A stretch of 64,000 bases of DNA from positions 62,001 to 126,000 of the IMG/VR virus record IMGVR_UViG_3300018424_000006, one strand, 5' to 3'. Both the position numbers and the translations under genes were made by a program. Of the stretch, positions 6,442 to 58,175 are shown piece after piece. Each line of letters opens with the position of its first letter. Position 1 is the first letter of the stretch. Under the pieces are notes generated by a model. The model did not search any database, was not told the origin of the DNA, and saw nothing but the letters and a program-made list of their open reading frames with translations.

Positions 6442-6789
6442 ATGGCCAATATCGATTATGTTGTCGAGTGGTTCTTCCAAGGGTACGAGATAACAGATCC
6501 CAAAGTAGTTTCCTTTAGGGAATTGCATTGGGAAGGGACAGGCTGTCAGTGGGTCGTACAGCGCTCCTCAGGAGTCGCTTACGCATTAGCCCTACTAAGT
6601 CAGCGTGTTGGACCAGAAGTGGCCGTAGAGAGCCTTCAAATAGCTCTCAACGATTTAATCTACGGTAAGATAAGTGTAATTGATGAAGACGGTGTCATGG
6701 CTCCGGTTGTGATTGCTCGTCTAGATAACATCTTGGCTTCATTGCCAGATGCAGAACCATTCATCATAAGCTTCCTTAACGAATTTTAA
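6442..6789 (+). CDS. Hypothetical protein
   Basis: RBS AAGGA; 115-aa ORF ending at a terminator. Confidence 0.7.
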   Translation: MANIDYVVEWFFQGYEITDPKVVSFRELHWEGTGCQWVVQRSSGVAYALALLSQRVGPEVAVESLQIALNDLIYGKISVIDEDGVMAPVVIARLDNILASLPDAEPFIISFLNEF

Positions 6790-6790
6790 A

Positions 6791-6845
6791 CAAAAAAATA
6801 AAGCTACCCTACTAGCCTGAGCTAGTAGGGTAGTGTCTTTATGCA
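6791..6845. terminator. Bidirectional terminator
   Basis: CTACCCTACTAGC-CTGA-GCTAGTAGGGTAG between convergent genes; near-identical copy at 57350-57404. Confidence 0.8.
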
Positions 6846-11061: not shown

Positions 11062-11082
11062 TAGAGTCTGCGGGCCATATAA

Positions 11083-11113
11083 GTAATATAGATTTGAAAG
11101 GTTCTAGAGCGCG
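11083..11113 (-). promoter_or_regulatory. Early (virion-RNAP-type) promoter 1
   Basis: CGCGCTCTAG-N12-CTATATTAC; TATATTAC is the phiKZ early promoter core. Confidence 0.8.
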
Positions 11114-11166
11114 TCACTTTATAAAACTAGGATTTATCATATACCTTTCAAAAGGAGATTAAGATA

Positions 11167-11781
11167 ATGCCTGTAAAATTAAATAGCAAGCCTTACGCGC
11201 TTATCGGTAACCGTAAAGACGTACATCTAGCTTATAGTGAAGAGTTAATCCGAATCGGTTACTACCTATCTAGTGTAGGAGCTTTATTCAGATCCGGTGG
11301 TTCTGGTACGTCAGATAAAAGCGGCGAGGCTGGGGTAGTTCGCTACTACGAAGAAAACGAAAAAGAAGTAGACTATGAAGTATTCTTGCCATGGAAAAAC
11401 TTTGACGCTGCCACCCGACTAAGTCCACCAGAGGCATATAAAACACTAACAAAAGAAATGGAAGAATGGGCTGACGAAATTCTTATTGAAAACAAAGTTT
11501 GTACATTCATTAAGAATCTACCTAGCGGCATTGCTAATATGTTTCGAAGAAATGTCTGTCAGATAATGGGCTATGGACCCGGACAACAATATTCTAAGTT
11601 CGTAGTCTATTATGCAAAAGAAGGTTATCCCAAACGAACTATAAAAGGCGGCACACGTATCGCAGTCTATTTGGCTCGTAAACTAAAGATACCTACCTTT
11701 AATATTGCATTCGAGAAAGACAGAAAAGAATTCAGTCGCTTTACTGGTTATGAGTTCACTGTTCTTGACGGATCATTTTAA
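11167..11781 (+). CDS. SLOG/DprA-like nucleotide-binding protein
   Basis: ALIGNR, RSGG..GxD...EAG, FLPWKNF, RN..QIMG and GGT..AV..A...KIP.FN motifs of the phage DprA-like SLOG family. Confidence 0.75.
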   Translation: MPVKLNSKPYALIGNRKDVHLAYSEELIRIGYYLSSVGALFRSGGSGTSDKSGEAGVVRYYEENEKEVDYEVFLPWKNFDAATRLSPPEAYKTLTKEMEEWADEILIENKVCTFIKNLPSGIANMFRRNVCQIMGYGPGQQYSKFVVYYAKEGYPKRTIKGGTRIAVYLARKLKIPTFNIAFEKDRKEFSRFTGYEFTVLDGSF

Positions 11782-11782
11782 A

Positions 11783-11868
11783 CAAAAAAATATCCCGGGA
11801 AAACAACCAGAAATATCTCTATGTATCAAAAAAATTAAATACATCGGATAGAGCATGTTTATGCTCAT
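11783..11868 (-). ncRNA. Candidate early small RNA
   Basis: Lies between promoter 2 and a G-U-containing hairpin plus U7 tract; three hairpins; no RBS-led ORF. Confidence 0.45.
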
Positions 11869-11872
11869 ATAA

Positions 11873-11903
11873 GCAATATAGGATTGTATTTTTCTGGAGC
11901 ACG
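11873..11903 (-). promoter_or_regulatory. Early promoter 2
   Basis: CGTGCTCCAG-N12-CTATATTGC. Confidence 0.7.
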
Positions 11904-11908
11904 TTAAT

Positions 11909-11950
11909 TACCCCTACCTGCCTTTTTAGGTGGGTAGGGGTATTATGCTG
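11909..11950 (+). terminator. Plus-strand terminator of the SLOG gene
   Basis: TACCCCTACCTGCCT-TTTT-AGGTGGGTAGGGGTA with two G-U pairs valid only on +, then TTATGCTG. Confidence 0.7.
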
Positions 11951-11951
11951 C

Positions 11952-11995
11952 AAAAAAAAGAGGACCTGTCGCAATGGGGGTGCGACAGGTCCTCT
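11952..11995 (-). terminator. Minus-strand terminator
   Basis: Perfect 15-bp stem AGAGGACCTGTCGCA/TGCGACAGGTCCTCT plus U-tract. Confidence 0.8.
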
Positions 11996-13791: not shown

Positions 13792-14415
13792 CTAGAGACA
13801 CTCGAGTATCTCGATATTTTTAGGGGCCTCTCGACCGTTAGGGTAAGTCACCTTATTCTTTTTCAAGCTAGGTGTAATGTGTAGCGAGTCCATTCCTTCC
13901 CGTCTACTCTTTGTTAGCAGTAGATTGATATAGTCCGGAAGATACTTCTTAAAGCTGCGGATTTTTCTTAAAGTACAAAGTACTACTTTGTAGCGGTCCT
14001 TACCGGAACCCTTTGTAAAATAAGTCACCGGAATTAATCGATCATCACCTTCTAGGTTAAACATAAAGTTTACCTGAGCATTGGTATTATGATCTTTTAA
14101 TTGGGTCAGCTTTTTAATTCCGTCTTCAGGAATCTGGACGTCCTCGTTGTTTGTGTTAAGAGTGCCGTTCTTAGCCCAAACAGTGCAAACTGCAAAGTCG
14201 TCACTGAAATACGTTAATGCCGGAGAAACCAGCACGTTCGTTTTTCTAAACTTAGTAGGTCGGTGTATATCCACTTCTGGAGTGGAGCTAAACGTCACTA
14301 TTAAGGATGGGCTCTTGTAAGCATAGGCTTCCCAATTGACCCTGACATTCTTTACAGTTAGTCCCTCTTCTGTAGTTATAGTTTCCATAGTCCTTTGATA
14401 TGGTTGGTAGTTCAT
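13792..14415 (-). CDS. Early hypothetical protein
   Basis: Directly behind promoter 3; the first ATG is at the predicted TSS, alternative start at 14388. Confidence 0.7.
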   Translation of the reverse strand: MNYQPYQRTMETITTEEGLTVKNVRVNWEAYAYKSPSLIVTFSSTPEVDIHRPTKFRKTNVLVSPALTYFSDDFAVCTVWAKNGTLNTNNEDVQIPEDGIKKLTQLKDHNTNAQVNFMFNLEGDDRLIPVTYFTKGSGKDRYKVVLCTLRKIRSFKKYLPDYINLLLTKSRREGMDSLHITPSLKKNKVTYPNGREAPKNIEILECL

Positions 14416-14450: not shown

Positions 14451-14490
14451 GCATAAAGACTACTATCGACCGAAGCCGATAGTAGTCTTA
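14449..14490 (-). terminator. Portal gene terminator
   Basis: AAGACTACTATCG/CGATAGTAGTCTT stem plus TATGCCG tail. Confidence 0.75.
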
Positions 14491-14497
14491 TAATTAA

Positions 14498-16906
14498 TTA
14501 AAACTCGCCAAAGTCATCACTAGAATCGCCTAGGTCGTCAGTGGATTCTTCACTGAAACCAGAGTCGTTATCCTCACCTTCTGCTCCGGGGTCATCAGAA
14601 CCACCTTCTTCAGAAGTGTCGTCTAAGTTGTCGTCTTCAGCTGGAACGTCATCATCGGAAGAGAACTCATCTTCCTCTCCTTCTGCTCCGCCCTGCTCCT
14701 CTTCTTTCTTAGCCAAACGCTCTTCTTCATCTGCGTCTAACTTATCTTGAAGATCTTCAGTTTTGTTGTCTTGTTTAATATCGACTTTCTTAATATCACG
14801 ATAAGTATCGCCAATAAGCCCTGCCATCATTTCAACATGAGCCTTAATCTTATCTTTAATGCCGCCATTACCTTCAGCAGAAAGTAACTGATCAAGTTCA
14901 GGTAAGATATTTTGGCTACGCATCCAGTCACGGACTAGGGTACTGATCATCATCTCGCGGAAGTTTTCGATGCCGGTAGGCACTGTATCGCCTTCAAACA
15001 TATCGGAAAGCATTTCGTCAGTAAGATAGTTATCAACTGCTATTTCAGCAAACTCACGGAATTTCTGCAGAGCCTCAGAATGTGCCTCAATCTTGGTCGT
15101 ATCTGGTTCAGGGAAAGATACTTCGATACCCAGTAAGATATCTTCCATAGATACTTTCTTTTTACCTATTTCATAAAGATCTTTAAGAAGCTTACCAGAC
15201 CATCGTACATACTTACGTACGTGTTCGGTTGACTGACTACCCAAAATCTTCTGATAGATACGAATACGACGAGCAAGTAGCTTGTTTGACGTTACGATGC
15301 CTGTGGCGAAATCGCCTTGGTACATCTGGTCAACTACTTCAGGAGGCATTCCCATGCCGTGATACTGAGTCTTCTTAAGCTGCTCTTCCATCTGGTCATC
15401 AGGACGAACTCGATCTCGACTATTGTCTTCAATCTCAGCTTTAGTAGACGGAAACGCAGTACCGCCATCAACATTAACCTGAATACCAGAATGCTGTAGG
15501 TTTCTAATCATGTCCGTTGGTTCATGATAGTCCCCTAGAGGTAAACCGTCGTTCTGCATCTTAGAGAATTCAGAAACGATCATGTGAACAGCTTTAACCG
15601 GATCTTGTTCGTCTTCATCTAACGTGATGTTTAGATTAGTACGACCCACCGCATTCTTAACTGAAGAAATCAAGTTAGAGAAAAGCACGGCTGAGCGCAT
15701 AGAAGAATATAGCTTAGTTCTTTCTAGAAGAGATTCACCAATACCTTCTGGAGTATAACTGAAAGCAAAATAAGTAATCAGTTCTTTATCCACATAAAGC
15801 AGCTTGGTTTTCTTATGGGACAGTGCACGCCAGAACATGACGTTATACACTTCTTCAGAATCGGCTACTTCAACATTGCCGCCCACAAGACCATCTTTCA
15901 ATGCTTCTTCTAAGTGGGTATTGATATGCTTATGATAAAGATTAGTTAGTTCCTTAGCACTACTTACTGTATTGCCACCCAAACCAAGTTCTTGAATGAT
16001 CTTGTTTAGATGATTATCATTAGAAGCTGAAAGAGTCTTAAGCTTCTCTGTATGATCGCCATCTGTCACCCTAGATACTGGATAACCGTTCTCGTCGAGA
16101 AGTATATAGAAAGCTAACTGCTTACGAGGGTTACTTGGCTCATGAATAGGGATAACACAATCAAACGGTATGCGCTTAACTAAAGGAGCTTCGCTGGCAT
16201 CGCTAGCATCAATTGGACGGATACTCAGAATGTTTTTATTCTGGTCTCCGTACATATTCTCTAGACCGGCATGTAAAATAGAAGCATTACTTAATGCCTT
16301 ACTTCTTAATTCAGGAGCCGCTAATAACTCTAGGTTATCAGTTACTTCGATGCCTAGTTTATTCGCTTTGCATTTAACAAACGAAGGTGGCTTACTATTC
16401 ATAACCTGAATCTGTCTAGTGAAGCTTTCCAAACCTGCCGTAGCATTAACAGAGCCGGTTACATTTTCAACAATAGGACGAGGAAGGATAAGGGAAGTAT
16501 AACTACCATAATCAAACAGAGCCTCGCGAATAATAGTCGGAATCTCTTCAGAAATATTATAAACTTCGGTGAAGTGCTCATTAAGCTTAGTGGCAATATC
16601 TGCAGCTACTTGCTCGTCTACGTCATCAAGACTTACTTTAATCTCGATATCAGTATCCGTAAAGTCTTTAGGGTTACAGATACTAGACACTAGAATCTCT
16701 TCAACTAATGCAAGGTCAGGAAGTATCTCTTTAATACTCTTGGCTTCTGAACCTTTACGACTTAGTTTATTAAACGTGTCTTCTAAAGAAGCGGTATTAA
16801 CTGTCTTCTTTTTCTTTTTATCTTCAACAATAATCTTTCTCGGAACAGTCGCCTTCTTAATAAGTGCGCTTTCCGTATTACTGCTGATCTTGGATACTTT
16901 TGTCAT
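14498..16906 (-). CDS. Portal protein (phiKZ gp129-like)
   Basis: ILPDL..VEEILVSSI.NP.D, IIREALF..GSY, YFAF.Y...G.G.SLL and VKNAVGRT motifs; acidic tail; synteny. Confidence 0.8.
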   Translation of the reverse strand: MTKVSKISSNTESALIKKATVPRKIIVEDKKKKKTVNTASLEDTFNKLSRKGSEAKSIKEILPDLALVEEILVSSICNPKDFTDTDIEIKVSLDDVDEQVAADIATKLNEHFTEVYNISEEIPTIIREALFDYGSYTSLILPRPIVENVTGSVNATAGLESFTRQIQVMNSKPPSFVKCKANKLGIEVTDNLELLAAPELRSKALSNASILHAGLENMYGDQNKNILSIRPIDASDASEAPLVKRIPFDCVIPIHEPSNPRKQLAFYILLDENGYPVSRVTDGDHTEKLKTLSASNDNHLNKIIQELGLGGNTVSSAKELTNLYHKHINTHLEEALKDGLVGGNVEVADSEEVYNVMFWRALSHKKTKLLYVDKELITYFAFSYTPEGIGESLLERTKLYSSMRSAVLFSNLISSVKNAVGRTNLNITLDEDEQDPVKAVHMIVSEFSKMQNDGLPLGDYHEPTDMIRNLQHSGIQVNVDGGTAFPSTKAEIEDNSRDRVRPDDQMEEQLKKTQYHGMGMPPEVVDQMYQGDFATGIVTSNKLLARRIRIYQKILGSQSTEHVRKYVRWSGKLLKDLYEIGKKKVSMEDILLGIEVSFPEPDTTKIEAHSEALQKFREFAEIAVDNYLTDEMLSDMFEGDTVPTGIENFREMMISTLVRDWMRSQNILPELDQLLSAEGNGGIKDKIKAHVEMMAGLIGDTYRDIKKVDIKQDNKTEDLQDKLDADEEERLAKKEEEQGGAEGEEDEFSSDDDVPAEDDNLDDTSEEGGSDDPGAEGEDNDSGFSEESTDDLGDSSDDFGEF

Positions 16907-16908
16907 CT

Positions 16909-18330
16909 TTAAACCTCAGTGGGTATATAAATGTCGCGAAGGGCCGGGTGTCCCATATTCTTTAAGATCCCTAAAACATATACGGCAGAGTTACTGAAAC
17001 TCATAAATTCCAGATCCCAGTTATATTTTAATTCGCCTGTCTTGGCAAACGCCTTATTGACATTAAGAGTTCTTAACAAAAGATCAAGCGGACAATTAAG
17101 TAGCTGTGACCTTAAGTTATCTTTAAAATGGACCGGAAAACCTTTACGTGCTAGTCGGCTATCCTCTACTTCTAGGATGTCGATAGGATGGAAAGAATAT
17201 CTAAATAAAGCATGAAGTGAATCGTCGCTAATATCCGAGATATCAATTTTTAGATCGCTATAGAACTTCTTTATCTGAGCTGTCTTGATGCCATGACATT
17301 TGTGATTAATGCAAGCGTAATAGCCGCCAATTAACCTAAGGTCATGTTCACAAGAACTGCAGTGAGGCCTGGACTCTGTACCGGGATCTATGACATCTTT
17401 AATAATGAAGTTATCTTCTTTATCTTTGGCCATCATAACCATAGCCCCACGATTTAGTTTCTTTTCGGTCAAGAGAAGAGTGTCATCTAACTTAATTGTA
17501 AATCGCTTACGTGGAGACGAAACAGAATATATCTCAACTCCTGCAATCCCTTTATGGTTAGGTGTGAATGTGAGGTCTGTAAAATTTACCCGAATGCCTT
17601 CCGATTCGGCATTAATAAGATTCCATTCAAACGGATTCTTTCTGCCCACTGGAAGATTTTGATCAAAAAGATATGCTTCGCGACATTCTCTAAAATCTTC
17701 GGCAAAGTTTAAATCAAATAGTCTATCGGCATTAGAAGAATACGGTTGTAGATCAGACCCTCTAAGAATAGTCTCAGGAATCATTCTAAAACCTAGCTTC
17801 TTTAAATAGACTCTTTGGGTCTTGTAGTCGGAACTAATGGTTTCTGGATCAAATTTAAAAGTCCCATAAATGAAGATATCGATTAACTTAGCATGATCCT
17901 TATCTTTAACCAAGTAGTATGGGACCTTACTATAAATACTCTTCTCACCAGAATGTCTTATCGTAGCAACTCCTCTCAATTCCATACTAGCAAAGCTAGT
18001 AAGTTTCTTCGGAATTAAATTTGCTTCTACTAAATAGGAAGTAATATCTTCTCCAGAACAGCCATCGCCAAAAGTAATTGCGCTAACTAAAGTTCCGCTA
18101 GCGTATTTAGCCGTAAATTCGATTCCTAATGGCCGAGGAATAATGACATAGGACTTATTTAGATCTATATCTTTACAAAACTCTTTCATTGGCTCCTTTG
18201 TTGTAAGGATTGGACCAAAATGAAAGTTGTGTCTGATTTTCTGTGTTATTAATCTACTGTTTTCCAGTGACTTCAGAGGGAATTTGAACTCGTTCTTTTC
18301 CTCTTTCGTTAGCTGCGAAAATATATGCAT
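16909..18330 (-). CDS. NAD-dependent DNA ligase homolog with degenerate active site
   Basis: SAITFGDGCSGEDIT and ELRG match the LigA adenylation domain; C4 Zn finger CSSC...CINHKC; motif I KxDG is RPLG; no BRCT-like tail seen. Confidence 0.7.
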   Translation of the reverse strand: MHIFSQLTKEEKNEFKFPLKSLENSRLITQKIRHNFHFGPILTTKEPMKEFCKDIDLNKSYVIIPRPLGIEFTAKYASGTLVSAITFGDGCSGEDITSYLVEANLIPKKLTSFASMELRGVATIRHSGEKSIYSKVPYYLVKDKDHAKLIDIFIYGTFKFDPETISSDYKTQRVYLKKLGFRMIPETILRGSDLQPYSSNADRLFDLNFAEDFRECREAYLFDQNLPVGRKNPFEWNLINAESEGIRVNFTDLTFTPNHKGIAGVEIYSVSSPRKRFTIKLDDTLLLTEKKLNRGAMVMMAKDKEDNFIIKDVIDPGTESRPHCSSCEHDLRLIGGYYACINHKCHGIKTAQIKKFYSDLKIDISDISDDSLHALFRYSFHPIDILEVEDSRLARKGFPVHFKDNLRSQLLNCPLDLLLRTLNVNKAFAKTGELKYNWDLEFMSFSNSAVYVLGILKNMGHPALRDIYIPTEV

Positions 18331-22302: not shown

Positions 22303-22360
22303 AAAAAATAAAGCTATACTCCCTAGGCATTAGCCTAGGGAGTATGGTCTTTTTATGTCG
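22303..22360. terminator. Bidirectional terminator
   Basis: CTATACTCCCCTAGGC-ATTA-GCCTAGGGAGTATGG between convergent genes. Confidence 0.75.
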
Positions 22361-24434: not shown

Positions 24435-24520
24435 TTTCTTAGTCTCTTGTTCCTCTAATTTCCTTTTAGGTAATCAGACAAGCAAACGATATTAATTATA
24501 TCGTAGCTATCACCATTAAA

Positions 24521-31419: not shown

Positions 31420-31462
31420 CGGCATAAAAAATAACCCCTCAGCTATTCGCTGAGGGGTTATT
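31420..31462 (-). terminator. Major capsid gene terminator
   Basis: AATAACCCCTCAGC/GCTGAGGGGTTATT plus TTTTATGCCG. Confidence 0.8.
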
Positions 31463-31488
31463 TTCAACTAGTTACTTTAAAGCAGCTA

Positions 31489-38801: not shown

Positions 38802-38853
38802 CAAAAAAAGAAGCTACTCTACTCCCTCATGGGAGTAGAGTAGTATTCTGCCG
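38802..38853. terminator. Bidirectional terminator
   Basis: CTACTCTACTCCC-TCAT-GGGAGTAGAGTAG. Confidence 0.8.
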
Positions 38854-38854
38854 T

Positions 38855-39055
38855 CTAAGATAAGAAGGCTAGCATACGGCCTATTGTACCACCCGGGTTG
38901 GCAGGACTAATAAGCATTGCCTTACCTAAGCCTTTAGTTGGGTTAAAGTCCCCAACCTTCTTAGGTTCTTTCTTTTCTTCTTTGCCTTCGGCTTTCTTTT
39001 TAACCACACGACCTTTAGGTTCTTTTACTGGAGCGCCTGTTGTATTTAAAGACAT
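38855..39055 (-). CDS. Small Lys-rich early protein
   Basis: Start MSLNTTGAP (RBS AAGGA); sole gene between promoter 7 and a terminator. Confidence 0.6.
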   Translation of the reverse strand: MSLNTTGAPVKEPKGRVVKKKAEGKEEKKEPKKVGDFNPTKGLGKAMLISPANPGGTIGRMLAFLS

Positions 39056-39142: not shown

Positions 39143-39175
39143 GCATAAAGGCACTACTCCAATGGAGTAGTGCCT
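39141..39175 (-). terminator. Terminator with TATGCCG tail
   Basis: AGGCACTACTCC/GGAGTAGTGCCT. Confidence 0.75.
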
Positions 39176-39181
39176 ATTAAG

Positions 39182-40537
39182 TTATTCAGGTTTAACAAAT
39201 ACCTTAAGGGTACTGTTAGATCTATACTCAGTATCAGTCATACCGGTAGTTGCAGTTGTAATAACCGTCTGTACGCCCGTGAGAGTACCGACTGATTCTT
39301 TTACTAACCCATTCTTCATATAAAGAACTTTAACCGGCATACCGGGATACAGAAGACTCTGATTAGAATTCTGCCAGGTAAGCGTTAACTCGTGACCCAG
39401 TCCTTCCGTCAGATTACTGATTTCAGGATATGGATTATTCGTTATTCTCCCTTTCGCCCAACGGATATTATTATGTCCGTTTACAGGTTCTGCTATAGAG
39501 GTTTCTTTGAGAGTCTTATCCCTTTCTAAAGTTACTTTGTTTTCAGAAGGAACACCCATCAAATCCATTAAAGCAGAAGCCCTAACGTAACGCATACCAT
39601 TGCCTTTATTCAGCATACTAGAGCGACTAACGTCAGTCATAGTACTAGAGCCTGTAGAAAGGACGAAGATCTTCTTTCCGTCTTTCCTATAAGATCTTTC
39701 AATGGCAGGCATTTCATTTTCAGGTACATTAACTATCGTTAGAGTACTAGGCTTTTTATTGAAAAGTGTATAGTCTCTGGTAGGATATACAAACCACTTA
39801 CCGGCCTGCAAATAAACTCCTAGGCCGGAGCTGTAGATACCATAGTTCTTCTGAATGTAGTCAGGGAGATCTATGATGCGAGTACCTACCGGGATAATCA
39901 ATGGATCGATCACTCCTGAATTAGCGGGCTCGGATATCTCAACCCCACGAATACCTGTAAAGGTATCTTCCTTTAAAGGACCTATAGAAGTACCTCCATT
40001 GAGTCCATAACCCATTCCTACACGAAGTACATCTTTGATGGTAGACTCTCTAAAGATACCACCGAACTCTGCTAAACGAGAAGTGAATAAAGCTTCCTCA
40101 TTTAACTGGAAGGTAAAGTCTAGTTGATTAGCTGCTTCGTCTTCAGCGGCTCTATCTGATTCCTTTAGTTTAGCTAACTTATCAATGTCTGGGGCCGTTG
40201 TTAATGTAGCGGTATAGATTTGATAACTAACATCACCAAAAGACACATCTGAACCAGACTCTCCTTTACGAGAGCGAGTAACTTTAATCTTTAGGTTTTC
40301 CCGATGGGGATAGATATCTCTCTTGTAAGTAAAGGCACCTAACGTAAGTGTAATTAAAACCATATCTCCATAAGAGGATACATAGTCACGATTATAGTGA
40401 ATGCCGTCAACCCGGATTGCTTCAACGTCTTTATCTGGAGTAATAATTTCAGCTTCATATTTCCAGATATCAGCAGGTGCCCTGCTATTAGCCAGGGCAG
40501 TGATATCACTATAGATCGCTTCGTTTTCAAAAGCCAT
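39182..40537 (-). CDS. Virion structural protein, putative baseplate hub (gp101-like)
   Basis: RDY..SYGD, YIQK.YGIYSSGLG.Y.Q...WFVYP and W.NS...LLYPGMPVK motifs. Confidence 0.7.
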   Translation of the reverse strand: MAFENEAIYSDITALANSRAPADIWKYEAEIITPDKDVEAIRVDGIHYNRDYVSSYGDMVLITLTLGAFTYKRDIYPHRENLKIKVTRSRKGESGSDVSFGDVSYQIYTATLTTAPDIDKLAKLKESDRAAEDEAANQLDFTFQLNEEALFTSRLAEFGGIFRESTIKDVLRVGMGYGLNGGTSIGPLKEDTFTGIRGVEISEPANSGVIDPLIIPVGTRIIDLPDYIQKNYGIYSSGLGVYLQAGKWFVYPTRDYTLFNKKPSTLTIVNVPENEMPAIERSYRKDGKKIFVLSTGSSTMTDVSRSSMLNKGNGMRYVRASALMDLMGVPSENKVTLERDKTLKETSIAEPVNGHNNIRWAKGRITNNPYPEISNLTEGLGHELTLTWQNSNQSLLYPGMPVKVLYMKNGLVKESVGTLTGVQTVITTATTGMTDTEYRSNSTLKVFVKPE

Positions 40538-44015: not shown

Positions 44016-44061
44016 TCCAAAGCCTCCTCTATAAGGATAAGTAACAGAAAATCAGACAAGA

Positions 44062-44094
44062 CGGCATAAAAAGCCCTAGGTAGTCCTAGGGCTA
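44062..44094 (-). terminator. Terminator with TATGCCG tail
   Basis: AGCCCTAGG/CCTAGGGCT plus TTTTATGCCG. Confidence 0.75.
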
Positions 44095-44100
44095 ATTTGC

Positions 44101-55689: not shown

Positions 55690-57348
55690 ATGGAAACTCA
55701 ACGCAATTGTATTTGGGTAACCCATCATCGCTCTAAACATACTAAACAAGATGACTTGTTAGTCATTAAAGAACGAGTTAAAGAACCGAACAAAGAAGAA
55801 TACTCTAATGTTCGATACGTAAAGAATTTTAAACGACCATACTGGATAACTAAGAAAGCTCACCAAAGCACCCATGAGCAAAAGAAAGACTGGGAGCATA
55901 TGGGTAACCTAGACCGCTATGAATGCACGCAAGCTGAGCTAGCTACGCACTCTGCTAAAAATCTAGGTATGTATCTGCATAATGGTTTTGCAAAACAATC
56001 TGATGTTAACCGGTCTCCATACGTCTATGGTACAGACGTTACCTCTCCTGTTATCGTTAAGAACAGTTACAGAGATAAATGGCCAGATTATGCCCCTGCT
56101 GCCTCTGTAGCAGTACTCGATTACGAGACAGACGTTATTAACGATCCAGACGATAAGCGAGTGGTATCTGGAGCACTAACCTTTAGAAACAAATGTTACT
56201 TAGCAATCAGCCAGGACTTTGTTGGGACGTTACCAAATCCAGAAGAAAAGATTCGGGCTTGCATAGAAAAGCATCTATCTAAATATATCCATGATCGTGA
56301 TATAGAATTGTTCATTAAGATCGTTCCGGACTCAATGGCGGTTATTCGTTCTTGTATGAAAGCCGCCCATATGACTCAGCCAGACTACGTAGCAATATGG
56401 AACATGGTGTTCGATATTAACGTAATGATTGATGAATGTGAACGCTGCGGCATTGATCCTGCTGATATCTTCTGTGCTCCTGAAATCCCTAAAGAATTTA
56501 GAACCTTTAGATGGGTAGAGCAACCTAAGATCAAGCGTAAAGCTAATGGCGATACGATGAGTAAAGACCCATCGGAACTATGGCACCGCGTAGAAGCTCC
56601 TGCTAGTTTCTATTTCATAGATGCTATGTGTTTCTATCGAATCTCTCGAGTAATGCAAGGTAAGATTAACTCTTATTCTCTTGACGCCATTCTAGATCGT
56701 GAGTTGAAATTAGGTAAACTTCGTTTTGATGGCGCTAACGGTTTAACAGGCTTAGACTGGCACATTAAAATGCAGATGCAGTACAAACCTGAATATCTCG
56801 CATATAACTTATTTGACTGTATCTCAATGGAACTGTTGGATGAGAAGACTCAAGACTTATCTGTTGCCTTGGGTTCGTATGTGGGTATTAGTGAGTTGAA
56901 GTCTGTACCTAGTAACCCTAAGCGATTGGCGGATGCTTGTCACTTCTTCTTATTAGAACGCAATAAGGTTATCTGTAGTACGTCTGACGACATGACTCAA
57001 GAATTAGATAAACATCTACTTAGTCTTCGTAACTGGATCATTACACTAGCCTCTGAGCTTGTGGAAAATACTGGACGAAGTATTGTAGAAGGTATACCTG
57101 ATTCTGAAAGTCGTTTCTCTGGACACTGCGGAGATATCGATATTGCATCGGGTTATCCATCTGCCGGTACCGCTATGAATATATCTGGCGGCACTACTCT
57201 ATTTGAAGTAGTGGGCATTGAAGGTAAGTCTGAAGATACTCAGCGTCGTAATGGCGTAGACTTAAATGCTTGTAAGACTAACTGCGGTCAGTTAGGACGA
57301 GAGTTATTTGATCTACCTAGCTACACAGATGCCCTACAATATTTTTAA
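55690..57348 (+). CDS. Split family-B DNA polymerase, 3'-5' exonuclease-containing subunit (phiKZ gp82-like)
   Basis: ExoI LDYETD, ExoII WNMVFD, ExoIII YNLFD, YSLD.IL; PolB motif-A-like DIDIASGYPS near the C-terminus. Confidence 0.85.
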   Translation: METQRNCIWVTHHRSKHTKQDDLLVIKERVKEPNKEEYSNVRYVKNFKRPYWITKKAHQSTHEQKKDWEHMGNLDRYECTQAELATHSAKNLGMYLHNGFAKQSDVNRSPYVYGTDVTSPVIVKNSYRDKWPDYAPAASVAVLDYETDVINDPDDKRVVSGALTFRNKCYLAISQDFVGTLPNPEEKIRACIEKHLSKYIHDRDIELFIKIVPDSMAVIRSCMKAAHMTQPDYVAIWNMVFDINVMIDECERCGIDPADIFCAPEIPKEFRTFRWVEQPKIKRKANGDTMSKDPSELWHRVEAPASFYFIDAMCFYRISRVMQGKINSYSLDAILDRELKLGKLRFDGANGLTGLDWHIKMQMQYKPEYLAYNLFDCISMELLDEKTQDLSVALGSYVGISELKSVPSNPKRLADACHFFLLERNKVICSTSDDMTQELDKHLLSLRNWIITLASELVENTGRSIVEGIPDSESRFSGHCGDIDIASGYPSAGTAMNISGGTTLFEVVGIEGKSEDTQRRNGVDLNACKTNCGQLGRELFDLPSYTDALQYF

Positions 57349-57349
57349 A

Positions 57350-57404
57350 CAAAAAAAATAAAGATACCCTACTAGCCTGAGCTAGTAGGGTATTCTTTTA
57401 TGCC
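57350..57404. terminator. Bidirectional terminator
   Basis: ATACCCTACTAGC-CTGA-GCTAGTAGGGTAT; near-identical to 6791-6845. Confidence 0.8.
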
Positions 57405-58081: not shown

Positions 58082-58144
58082 TATATTTGTATTCTCCTAG
58101 TTATAATGAAAAGGCTAAGAGATATATTCTCTTAACTCATATAA

Positions 58145-58175
58145 GTAATATAGTACTATTTAGGTCTAGAACACG
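58145..58175 (-). promoter_or_regulatory. Early promoter 8
   Basis: CGTGTTCTAG-N12-CTATATTAC. Confidence 0.8.

What the first reader, a model, noticed from the sequence alone, without database searches (positions are those of the whole stretch)
11783..11950. Early promoter driving only a ~90-nt structured RNA antisense to the SLOG/DprA-like mRNA 3' UTR
Seen: of 8 copies of the bipartite early promoter, this is the only one not followed by a conventional gene. Its predicted transcript (11868 to ~11783) has GAGCAT/ATGCTC and ATGTAT/ATACAT hairpins and a G-U-rich terminator with U7 that folds only on the minus strand. The SLOG gene's own terminator (11909-11950, G-U pairs valid only on +) lies beyond the promoter, so the SLOG 3' UTR should fully overlap the small RNA. 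Inference: a phage early sRNA acting as a cis-antisense timer/antitoxin for a nucleotide-handling SLOG protein, or in trans on the host. A leaderless 31-aa ORF (MSINMLYPMYLIFLIH...) is the alternative, but an ATG occurs at about this position in all 8 promoter copies.
Basis: partly seen in the sequence, partly recalled or inferred. Interest (0 to 1): 0.68.

Follow-up and report, generated by a model that had tools for sequence, protein, structure and literature searches.

The report
Gene-less early promoter unit in jumbo phage
An uncultured phiKZ-like giant phage carries one copy of its early promoter that drives only a short, probably non-coding RNA lying opposite the tail of a DprA-like gene's message; the layout is real, but whether the RNA does anything is unproven and small RNAs of this sort are already catalogued in related phages.

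Summary
The window is part of a 220-kb phiKZ-like jumbo phage. It has exactly 8 copies, all on the minus strand, of a bipartite promoter: ACGTGyTCtAGA, 12 nt, CTATATTAC, 6 nt, then G. The core matches the published virion-RNA-polymerase early promoter of phiKZ, 201phi2-1 and AR9.

With 6 further copies elsewhere in the genome, 13 of 14 are followed by a ribosome-binding site and a gene. The copy at 11873-11904 is not.

By the published rule that transcription starts at the G 6 nt after the core, the start is G11866. That removes the A and U of the supposed leaderless ATG from the RNA. The predicted 83-nt RNA (11866 to 11784) folds into three hairpins (z -3.6). It lies entirely inside the roughly 170-nt 3' UTR of the convergent DprA-like gene, whose phiKZ-type terminator sits at 11909-11952.

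Three cautions apply:
- This is the only copy with G at an otherwise invariant A of the core.
- Its terminator stem is weak (-4.8 kcal/mol against -12 to -30 for the others).
- No close relatives exist, so covariation cannot be tested.

The nearest relative has a gene-less early unit in the same slot after the endolysin, but there it is not antisense to anything. The antitoxin reading is unsupported. A cis-antisense role is plausible, and a relic is nearly as likely.

The parts
11893..11904 (-). Upstream promoter element ACGTGCTCCAGA
   Evidence: Aligned with the same element in all 8 window copies at fixed spacing. The element CGTGTTCTAG is also present in the nearest relative's promoters.
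11873..11881 (-). Promoter core CTATATTGC, a variant of CTATATTAC
   Evidence: TATATTAC is the published phiKZ early promoter core. This is the only one of 14 copies with G at position 7.
11866..11866 (-). Predicted transcription start (G, 6 nt after the core)
   Evidence: AR9, phiKZ and phiR1-37 early promoters start at a conserved position 6 nt after the element. G is present at this position in all 14 copies of this phage and in all 7 copies in L096 and L098.
11784..11866 (-). Predicted 83-nt RNA without a gene
   Evidence: Three-hairpin fold, -20.3 kcal/mol, z -3.57. No Rfam family and no tRNA. No ORF preceded by a Shine-Dalgarno site.
11851..11866 (-). 5' hairpin GAGCAU-AAAC-AUGCUC, beginning at +1
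   Evidence: Similar 5' hairpins occur in about half of the other early transcripts.
11821..11844 (-). Weak A-U hairpin whose loop contains an internal U7
   Evidence: Present in the minimum-energy fold of the exact transcript but not in the fold of the 94-nt stretch.
11784..11812 (-). Terminator-like stem (11793-11812) followed by UA and U7 (11784-11790)
   Evidence: Terminator scan. The stem alone gives -4.8 kcal/mol, z -0.9. The tail ATTTTTTTGTTTAAAA is the same as at the phage's other convergent terminators.
11773..11868 (-). 31-aa ORF, judged not to be a gene
   Evidence: Its ATG is promoter positions -2, -1 and +1, so only the G is transcribed. There is no Shine-Dalgarno site. The next in-frame AUG lies in the 3' arm of the 5' hairpin.
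11167..11781 (+). DprA-like (SLOG superfamily) gene, convergent with the small unit
   Evidence: phrog_768, E 9.2e-34. About 31% identity to DprA-like proteins of T4-like phages. A homologue on the opposite strand lies next to the portal gene in L096 and L098.
11909..11952 (+). phiKZ-type terminator of the DprA-like transcript (stem 11909-11942, tail ATTATGCTGC)
   Evidence: -27.6 kcal/mol on the plus strand against -21.9 on the minus strand. The tail fits the published motif. Other plus-strand operons at convergent junctions reach their terminator within 17 nt of the stop codon.
11951..11995 (-). Strong terminator of the upstream 189-aa gene (stem 11959-11995, then U8)
   Evidence: -28.7 kcal/mol, z -10.6.
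11076..11115 (-). Next early promoter copy, driving the 84-aa gene beyond the DprA-like gene

Best explanation
This is a real copy of the phage's early promoter, of the type read by the polymerase carried in the virion. It drives a unit without a gene. Transcription most likely starts at G11866 and gives an RNA of about 83 nt with three hairpins, ending at the U7 tract three bases from the stop codon of the DprA-like gene.

The DprA-like message runs on to its own terminator at 11909-11952. The small RNA is therefore fully complementary to that 3' UTR.

The most likely action is in cis. Early in infection the RNA pairs with the DprA-like message, or polymerases starting here collide with those transcribing it. 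Either would lower or delay DprA-like expression. If the weak terminator leaks, the antisense transcript extends into the coding region.

Shown from sequence: the promoter copy, the absence of a gene, the fold and the nested layout. Inferred: that the promoter is active, where the RNA ends, and any effect on the DprA-like gene.
For: - The promoter match is far above background: 53.6 bits against 2 for the best non-promoter site.
- The core and the +1 G follow the published rule for phiKZ-type early promoters.
- It is 1 of 14 copies without a gene.
- The fold has z -3.57.
- The plus-strand terminator lies beyond the promoter and fits the phiKZ terminator motif. The plus-strand operons at the other convergent junctions reach their terminator within 17 nt of the stop codon, so this 3' UTR is exceptional and holds exactly this unit.
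- There is no early promoter on the plus strand anywhere in the window, so the DprA-like gene is probably not early.
- Small and antisense RNAs with defined starts have been mapped in phiKZ and 201phi2-1.
Against: - The core has G at a position that is A in the other 13 copies and in all 7 copies in the relatives. In AR9 a single deviation silenced a predicted early promoter.
- The terminator stem is far weaker than the phage's real terminators.
- The positional analogue in L096 is not antisense to any gene.
- In L096 and L098 the DprA-like gene has no such unit at its 3' end.
- No sequence variation exists to test selection: all copies of this phage are 100% identical.
- There are no expression data.
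Confidence: 0.35

Rival explanations
1. Relic. An ancestral arrangement of promoter, leader, terminator and gene lost its gene when the region was rearranged, leaving an orphan promoter and leader with no selected function. Any antisense RNA is a tolerated by-product.
For: - The DprA-like gene sits at a different place relative to the endolysin than in L096, so the region has been rearranged.
- In L096 the analogous unit is followed by a gene on the same strand.
- The promoter has a unique change at an invariant core position.
- The terminator looks like a degenerate copy of the phage's standard convergent terminator cassette: same A-run and tail, with a weak stem.
Against: - The rest of the 45-bp promoter is intact and scores third of eight.
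- A well-formed plus-strand terminator is placed so that the DprA-like message spans the unit.
- The RNA still folds better than shuffles.
Confidence: 0.3
2. An early small RNA, or a leader with an attenuator, whose role has nothing to do with the DprA-like gene. It could act in trans on host or phage messages, or be a regulated stop. It would be one of a class conserved after the endolysin module in this lineage.
For: - L096 has the order endolysin, one gene, early promoter, then a unit of about 100 nt without a gene. That unit has a 5' hairpin at +1, a middle hairpin and a strong phiKZ-type terminator (-29 kcal/mol, z -6.8). This is the same slot and the same three-hairpin plan as here.
- Promoter-proximal hairpins followed by a U-rich tail also occur in early leaders of a 276-kb relative.
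- 201phi2-1 has 11 mapped small RNAs, 8 of them made by premature termination.
- The RNA has an internal U7 and a 3' U7.
Against: - There is no sequence similarity to the L096 RNA beyond the first 24 nt or so.
- The genes preceding the two units are not detectably related.
- No target better than shuffled controls was found in the window's translation start regions.
- The host is unknown.
- Positional agreement among 6-8 promoter slots could be chance (my rough estimate is about 0.15).
Confidence: 0.2
3. The terminator leaks, and the promoter mainly serves as an extra upstream early promoter for the operon beyond the DprA-like gene (the 84-aa gene onward), reading through that gene in antisense.
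For: The terminator stem is weak. The scan found no other minus-strand terminator between 11783 and 11090.
Against: That operon has its own full promoter copy at 11076-11115. The U7 and tail match those of working convergent terminators.
Confidence: 0.08
4. A leaderless or short-leader message for a hydrophobic peptide of 27-31 aa.
For: An ORF exists at 11868-11773.
Against: - Under the published start rule, the A and U of its ATG lie upstream of +1.
- There is no Shine-Dalgarno site.
- The next in-frame AUG is buried in the 5' hairpin.
- In phiKZ no leaderless transcripts were detected.
- The hydrophobic stretches are 10-12 residues, too short to span a membrane, and are what a U-rich sequence gives when translated.
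- The same position in other copies opens ORFs of only 2-7 codons.
Confidence: 0.03
5. An RNA antitoxin for a toxic SLOG protein.
For: Only the convergent overlap, which resembles type I toxin-antitoxin pairs with overlapping 3' ends.
Against: - The protein is a 204-aa DprA-like recombination mediator. A published survey reports DprA/Smf genes as conserved in several jumbo phage groups and proposes that they act as single-strand DNA binding proteins.
- Its homologues in L096 and L098 have no such RNA.
- Type I toxins are small membrane peptides (my own knowledge).
Confidence: 0.03

Closest known systems
Small and antisense RNAs mapped in phiKZ and 201phi2-1 by ONT-cappable-seq
   Same: Same phage group, same promoter and terminator grammar. 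Short units in which a terminator follows a start site closely. 201phi2-1 has 11 small RNAs, 3 of them intergenic; phiKZ has 4 antisense RNAs with a defined start.
   Different: Those were mapped by experiment; this one is only predicted. None of them has a known function. The conserved one (upstream of the tail gene gp182/gp277) is a 5' UTR element, not a unit nested in a convergent 3' UTR.
Lambda OOP RNA (77 nt, antisense to the 3' end of the cII message; RNase III-dependent). From my own knowledge, not checked here.
   Same: A short RNA without a gene, with its own promoter and terminator, convergent with and complementary to the 3' end of a phage message.
   Different: OOP is made by the host polymerase in a temperate phage and overlaps coding sequence. 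Here the promoter is of the virion-polymerase type in a lytic jumbo phage, the overlap is with the 3' UTR only, and the terminator is weak.
phiKZ, AR9 and 201phi2-1 virion-polymerase early promoters
   Same: The TATATTAC core, a conserved start 6 nt downstream, many copies in front of small genes of unknown function.
   Different: This lineage has its own upstream element, ACGTGyTCtAGA, at fixed spacing. It is shared with the relatives L096 and L098 and differs from the published consensus strings listed for five other phages.
Type I toxin-antitoxin pairs with overlapping 3' ends (for example TxpA/RatA). From my own knowledge.
   Same: Convergent transcripts that overlap at their 3' ends.
   Different: The partner here is a 204-aa soluble DprA-like protein, not a small membrane toxin.

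Membership tests
phiKZ-type virion-polymerase early promoter | Conserved AT-rich core TATATTA(C/T) | tested here: met
   7 of 8 core positions match. The G at position 7 is unique among 14 copies. Published cores are listed.
phiKZ-type virion-polymerase early promoter | Conserved start (G) 6 nt after the core | tested here: met
   G11866. G is present at this position in 14 of 14 copies here and 7 of 7 in L096 and L098. The rule is stated.
phiKZ-type virion-polymerase early promoter | Transcription in the first minutes, independent of new protein synthesis | not testable with these tools
   There are no expression data, and the phage is known only from metagenomes.
phiKZ-type terminator (GC-rich stem followed by YTTATKYYGT) | Strong stem followed by a TTAT-type tail | tested here: met
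   For the plus-strand element 11909-11952: -27.6 kcal/mol, tail ATTATGCTGC.
Intrinsic terminator at the end of the small RNA | Stable stem directly followed by a U-run | tested here: inconclusive
   U7 and the conserved tail are present. The stem gives only -4.8 kcal/mol, z -0.9, against -12 to -30 for the phage's other terminators.
Cis-antisense small RNA (lambda OOP type) | Own promoter, no gene, full complementarity to a convergent message | tested here: met
   Promoter by motif, no gene, nested in the 3' UTR as defined by the plus-strand terminator. That both RNAs exist at the same time is inferred.
Cis-antisense small RNA (lambda OOP type) | Effect on stability or translation of the target message | not testable with these tools
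   This needs an experiment.
Trans-acting small RNA | A conserved seed with targets | tested here: not met
   The best duplex with the window's translation start regions is -17.0 kcal/mol, weaker than 97% of shuffled controls. The host genome is unknown. There is no conservation beyond about 24 nt with L096.
Type I toxin-antitoxin | The toxin is a small hydrophobic peptide repressed by the antisense RNA | tested here: not met
   The partner is a 204-aa DprA-like protein.
Leaderless micro-ORF | AUG at the 5' end of the transcript | tested here: not met
   The predicted +1 is the G of the ATG.
Any Rfam family | Score at or above the gathering threshold | tested here: not met
   No hit at gathering threshold in the window. 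Sub-threshold hits cover only the terminator hairpins.

The most novel reading that the evidence does not exclude
This lineage of phiKZ-like phages keeps, just after its endolysin module, a class of three-hairpin RNAs of about 80-100 nt made by the virion polymerase in the first minutes of infection. They would act before the phage nucleus forms, on host or phage messages. In this phage the RNA would have been co-opted as an antisense brake on a recombination gene.
Probability: 0.12. Interest if true: 0.6.

Novelty: new member of a known kind. Interest (0 to 1): 0.33.

Why it matters
No small RNA of a phiKZ-like jumbo phage has a known function, and none has been tied to the virion polymerase's early programme. 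A gene-less early unit nested in the 3' UTR of a recombination gene, with a positional counterpart in a distant relative, would be a concrete candidate for RNA-level timing control. The practical value is limited: the phage is uncultured, its host is unknown, and no relatives are close enough for covariation analysis.

Tried and rejected
- **Close relatives for covariation.** Searches with the flanking 189-aa protein, the DprA-like protein and the portal protein (as a single sequence and as a 3-sequence alignment) in viral contigs, metagenome contigs and the 5.8-billion-protein set found only 100% identical copies of the same phage. The next relative has 36% portal identity.
- **Cultured phages.** There is no nucleotide match. 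Protein matches are at or below about 31% identity.
- **Known RNA families.** Rfam and tRNA scans found nothing.
- **Alignment with the L096 RNA.** There is no shared structure beyond one 4-bp stem.
- **Trans targets.** None in the window's translation start regions beats shuffled controls.
- **Copies of the RNA body elsewhere.** None in the window or in the fetched loci.
- **A second promoter class upstream of the DprA-like gene.** K-mer enrichment recovered only the early promoter and Shine-Dalgarno sites, so the timing class of the DprA-like gene stays inferred.
- **Replication-origin primer idea.** There is no local GC-skew signal. This neither supports nor excludes it.
- **More distant relatives.** L099, L100 and L221 have a different gene order and are not informative.
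- **Solved structures.** A sequence search with the DprA-like protein gave no significant match.
- **The 395-aa early gene.** No match in cultured phages.

Full report
**What the window is.** The window is bases 62001-126000 of IMGVR_UViG_3300018424_000006, a 219.8-kb contig. The portal-like protein (phrog_3004), the major head protein (phrog_3231) and a phiKZ internal head protein domain (PF12699) place it among phiKZ-like jumbo phages. Its portal-like protein shows no more than about 30% identity to cultured phages of Vibrio, Xanthomonas, Pseudomonas and others. The same phage occurs, 100% identical over the 1.7 kb around the finding, in at least five other assemblies. The nearest different phage has a portal only 36% identical (L096/L097 and L098).

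**The promoter family.** The repeat search and a position weight matrix find exactly eight copies, all on the minus strand, scoring 44-58 bits. The best other site on either strand scores 2. The consensus is ACGTGyTCtAGA, 12 nt, CTATATTAC, 6 nt, G.

- TATATTAC is the published phiKZ early promoter core. The 201phi2-1 and OBP motifs end in a similar (D)TG.
- The AR9 study gives the early consensus as TATATTAT-(6N)-G(+1). It states that phiKZ and phiR1-37 also start at a conserved position 6 nt after the element.
- Six further copies from the same phage, outside the window, all carry TATATTAC and a G six bases later. The two bases before that G vary.

The nearest relative has the same upstream element, CGTGTTCTAG, with a slightly different core, CATATTAC-TATAGT-G. 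The bipartite design is therefore a lineage feature.

**The copy in the finding.**

- Upstream element 11893-11904, core 11873-11881, predicted start G11866.
- The other thirteen copies have a gene with a Shine-Dalgarno site starting about 30-80 nt downstream. At the 14427 copy the ORF list suggests a leaderless start, but a start at 14388 with an AAGGA site fits better.
- Only this copy lacks a gene.
- The 31-aa ORF needs the untranscribed A and U and has no Shine-Dalgarno site. Its next in-frame AUG lies inside the 5' hairpin. In phiKZ no leaderless transcripts were found.

**The predicted RNA.** The RNA from 11866 to 11784 folds into three hairpins (-20.3 kcal/mol, z -3.57):

- a 5' stem starting exactly at +1;
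- an A-U stem whose loop holds a U7;
- a 3' stem that runs into a second U7.

The 3' tail, ATTTTTTTGTTTAAAA, is the one found at the phage's other convergent terminators. The stem proper, however, gives only -4.8 kcal/mol (z -0.9). The other terminators I scanned give -12 to -30.

**The layout around it.**

- The upstream 189-aa gene ends with a strong terminator (11959-11995 plus U8).
- Facing it is a plus-strand hairpin (11909-11942). It is 5.7 kcal/mol more stable on the plus strand because of two G-U pairs.
- That hairpin is followed by ATTATGCTGC, which fits the tail of the published phiKZ terminator motif, a stem followed by YTTATKYYGT.
- The same 'stem plus TTTATGCCG' form marks many terminators here and in L096 and L098.
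- The plus-strand operons at the other convergent junctions reach their terminator within 17 nt of the stop codon. The DprA-like gene instead has about 128 nt before its stem, and that space holds exactly the minus-strand mini-unit.

Any RNA from this promoter is therefore antisense to the DprA-like 3' UTR. If it reads through, it is antisense to the coding region as well.

**The gene partner.** The 204-aa protein matches phrog_768, 'DprA-like DNA recombination-mediator protein' (E 9e-34). A survey of jumbo phages notes that DprA/Smf of the SLOG superfamily is conserved in several jumbo phage groups and suggests it may serve as an extra single-strand DNA binding protein. In L096 and L098 a homologue also lies on the opposite strand. 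There it is directly convergent with the portal gene and shares one terminator hairpin with it, and no promoter faces it. Nothing suggests that the protein is a toxin.

**Comparative evidence.** Gene order is conserved with L096: ligase, portal, a block of fast-evolving small genes with early promoters plus the endolysin and the DprA-like gene, then a shared pair of opposite-strand genes. The position of the DprA-like gene relative to the endolysin differs, so the block has been rearranged.

In L096 the order is endolysin, one gene, an early promoter (core TATATCAC, itself deviant), then a stretch of about 100 nt without a gene. That stretch has a 5' hairpin starting at +1, a middle hairpin and a strong phiKZ-type terminator (-29 kcal/mol, z -6.8), and it is followed about 130 nt later by the next gene. 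This is the same slot and the same three-hairpin plan as here.

The comparison has limits. The sequences align only over the first 24 nt or so. The preceding genes are unrelated. The L096 unit is not antisense to anything.

A 276-kb relative also has strong promoter-proximal hairpins in its early leaders. In 201phi2-1, 8 of 11 mapped small RNAs arise by premature termination in a 5' UTR.

**Weighing the readings.**

- *For an active, useful unit:* an otherwise intact 45-bp promoter, a fold better than shuffles, the nested layout with a dedicated plus-strand terminator, and the L096 analogue.
- *For a relic:* the unique G at an invariant core position, noting that in AR9 one deviation silenced a predicted early promoter; the weak terminator, which looks like a degenerate copy of the standard cassette; and the location at a rearranged junction.

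I rank the readings as follows:

| Reading | Confidence |
|---|---|
| Cis-antisense or convergent-interference element acting on the DprA-like gene | 0.35 |
| Relic | 0.30 |
| Small RNA or leader independent of the DprA-like gene | 0.20 |
| Read-through promoter | 0.08 |
| Peptide | 0.03 |
| Antitoxin | 0.03 |

**Novelty and interest.** Small and antisense RNAs are already catalogued in phiKZ and 201phi2-1, without known functions. This is a new, predicted member of that kind in an uncultured phage. Interest is modest because nothing can be tested without RNA data or an isolate.

Noticed in passing
window, e.g. 6790-6838, 14457-14498, 22312-22352, 31428-31470, 39149-39182, 44070-44100; L096 12299-12354; L098 12338-12395: Most terminators are a GC-rich stem followed by (C)TTTATGCCG(T). 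This matches the published phiKZ terminator motif and is conserved in relatives with only 36% portal identity. The tail contains TATG, which is the phiKZ late-promoter motif with G as the start, so these sites might double as late promoters.
   Followed up: partly
L096 16002-16136 (+): The nearest relative has an early-promoter unit of about 100 nt without a gene, with a strong terminator, just after its endolysin and one further gene. The next gene, 130 nt downstream, has no recognisable early promoter of its own, so the unit may work as an attenuator.
   Followed up: partly
window 11893-11904 and the other 7 copies; L096 4493, 13023, 14270, 16003, 16806, 18046; L098 about 13050: The upstream promoter element CGTGTTCTAG(A), at fixed spacing from the core, is shared by this phage and its distant relatives. 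It differs from the published promoter consensus strings of five other phiKZ-like phages.
   Followed up: partly
window 11867-11872, 11077-11082, 58141-58146 (-): Three of the eight copies read TTATAT before the +1 G. This creates TATG with the same G as the start, which is the phiKZ late-promoter motif. These three copies, including the one in the finding, could be read both early and late.
   Followed up: no
window 38855-39055 (-): A 67-aa lysine-rich protein gene forms a single-gene early unit of its own, running from promoter 39119 to the terminator at 38810-38849. The unit is convergent with a plus-strand operon and has the same layout as the unit in the finding, except that it holds a gene.
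   Followed up: no
window 6784-6839 and 57344-57399: Two convergent-junction terminators 50 kb apart are 88% identical over 56 nt, including the stem. The tail of the DprA-like junction (11776-11792) matches their first 17 nt.
   Followed up: partly
window 13792-14415 (-); L096 13057: ORF lists and gene callers start these genes at the ATG embedded in the promoter. By the start rule that ATG is not transcribed. The real start in the window is probably 14388 (198 aa, AAGGA site), and the L096 gene probably starts further downstream.
   Followed up: partly
L077 4023-4110 and L083 2270-2350 (IMGVR_UViG_2974649833_000001, 276 kb): Another phiKZ-like phage has early promoters reading TCTATATTACTTTAAT-G. 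Its leaders begin with strong hairpins followed by CTATTTTACA, ahead of genes at about +81 to +84.
   Followed up: no
L096 14632-14937 (+): A 101-aa ORF with a Shine-Dalgarno site fills a 500-nt gap that the deposited gene calls left empty.
   Followed up: no
window 44050-44065 (-), 18230-18245 (+), 24472-24480 (-): A shared string, TTGTCTGATTTTCTGT (in full at two sites, in part at a third), lies just after terminators or in leaders. TGTCTGATT is not over-represented in the window overall.
   Followed up: partly
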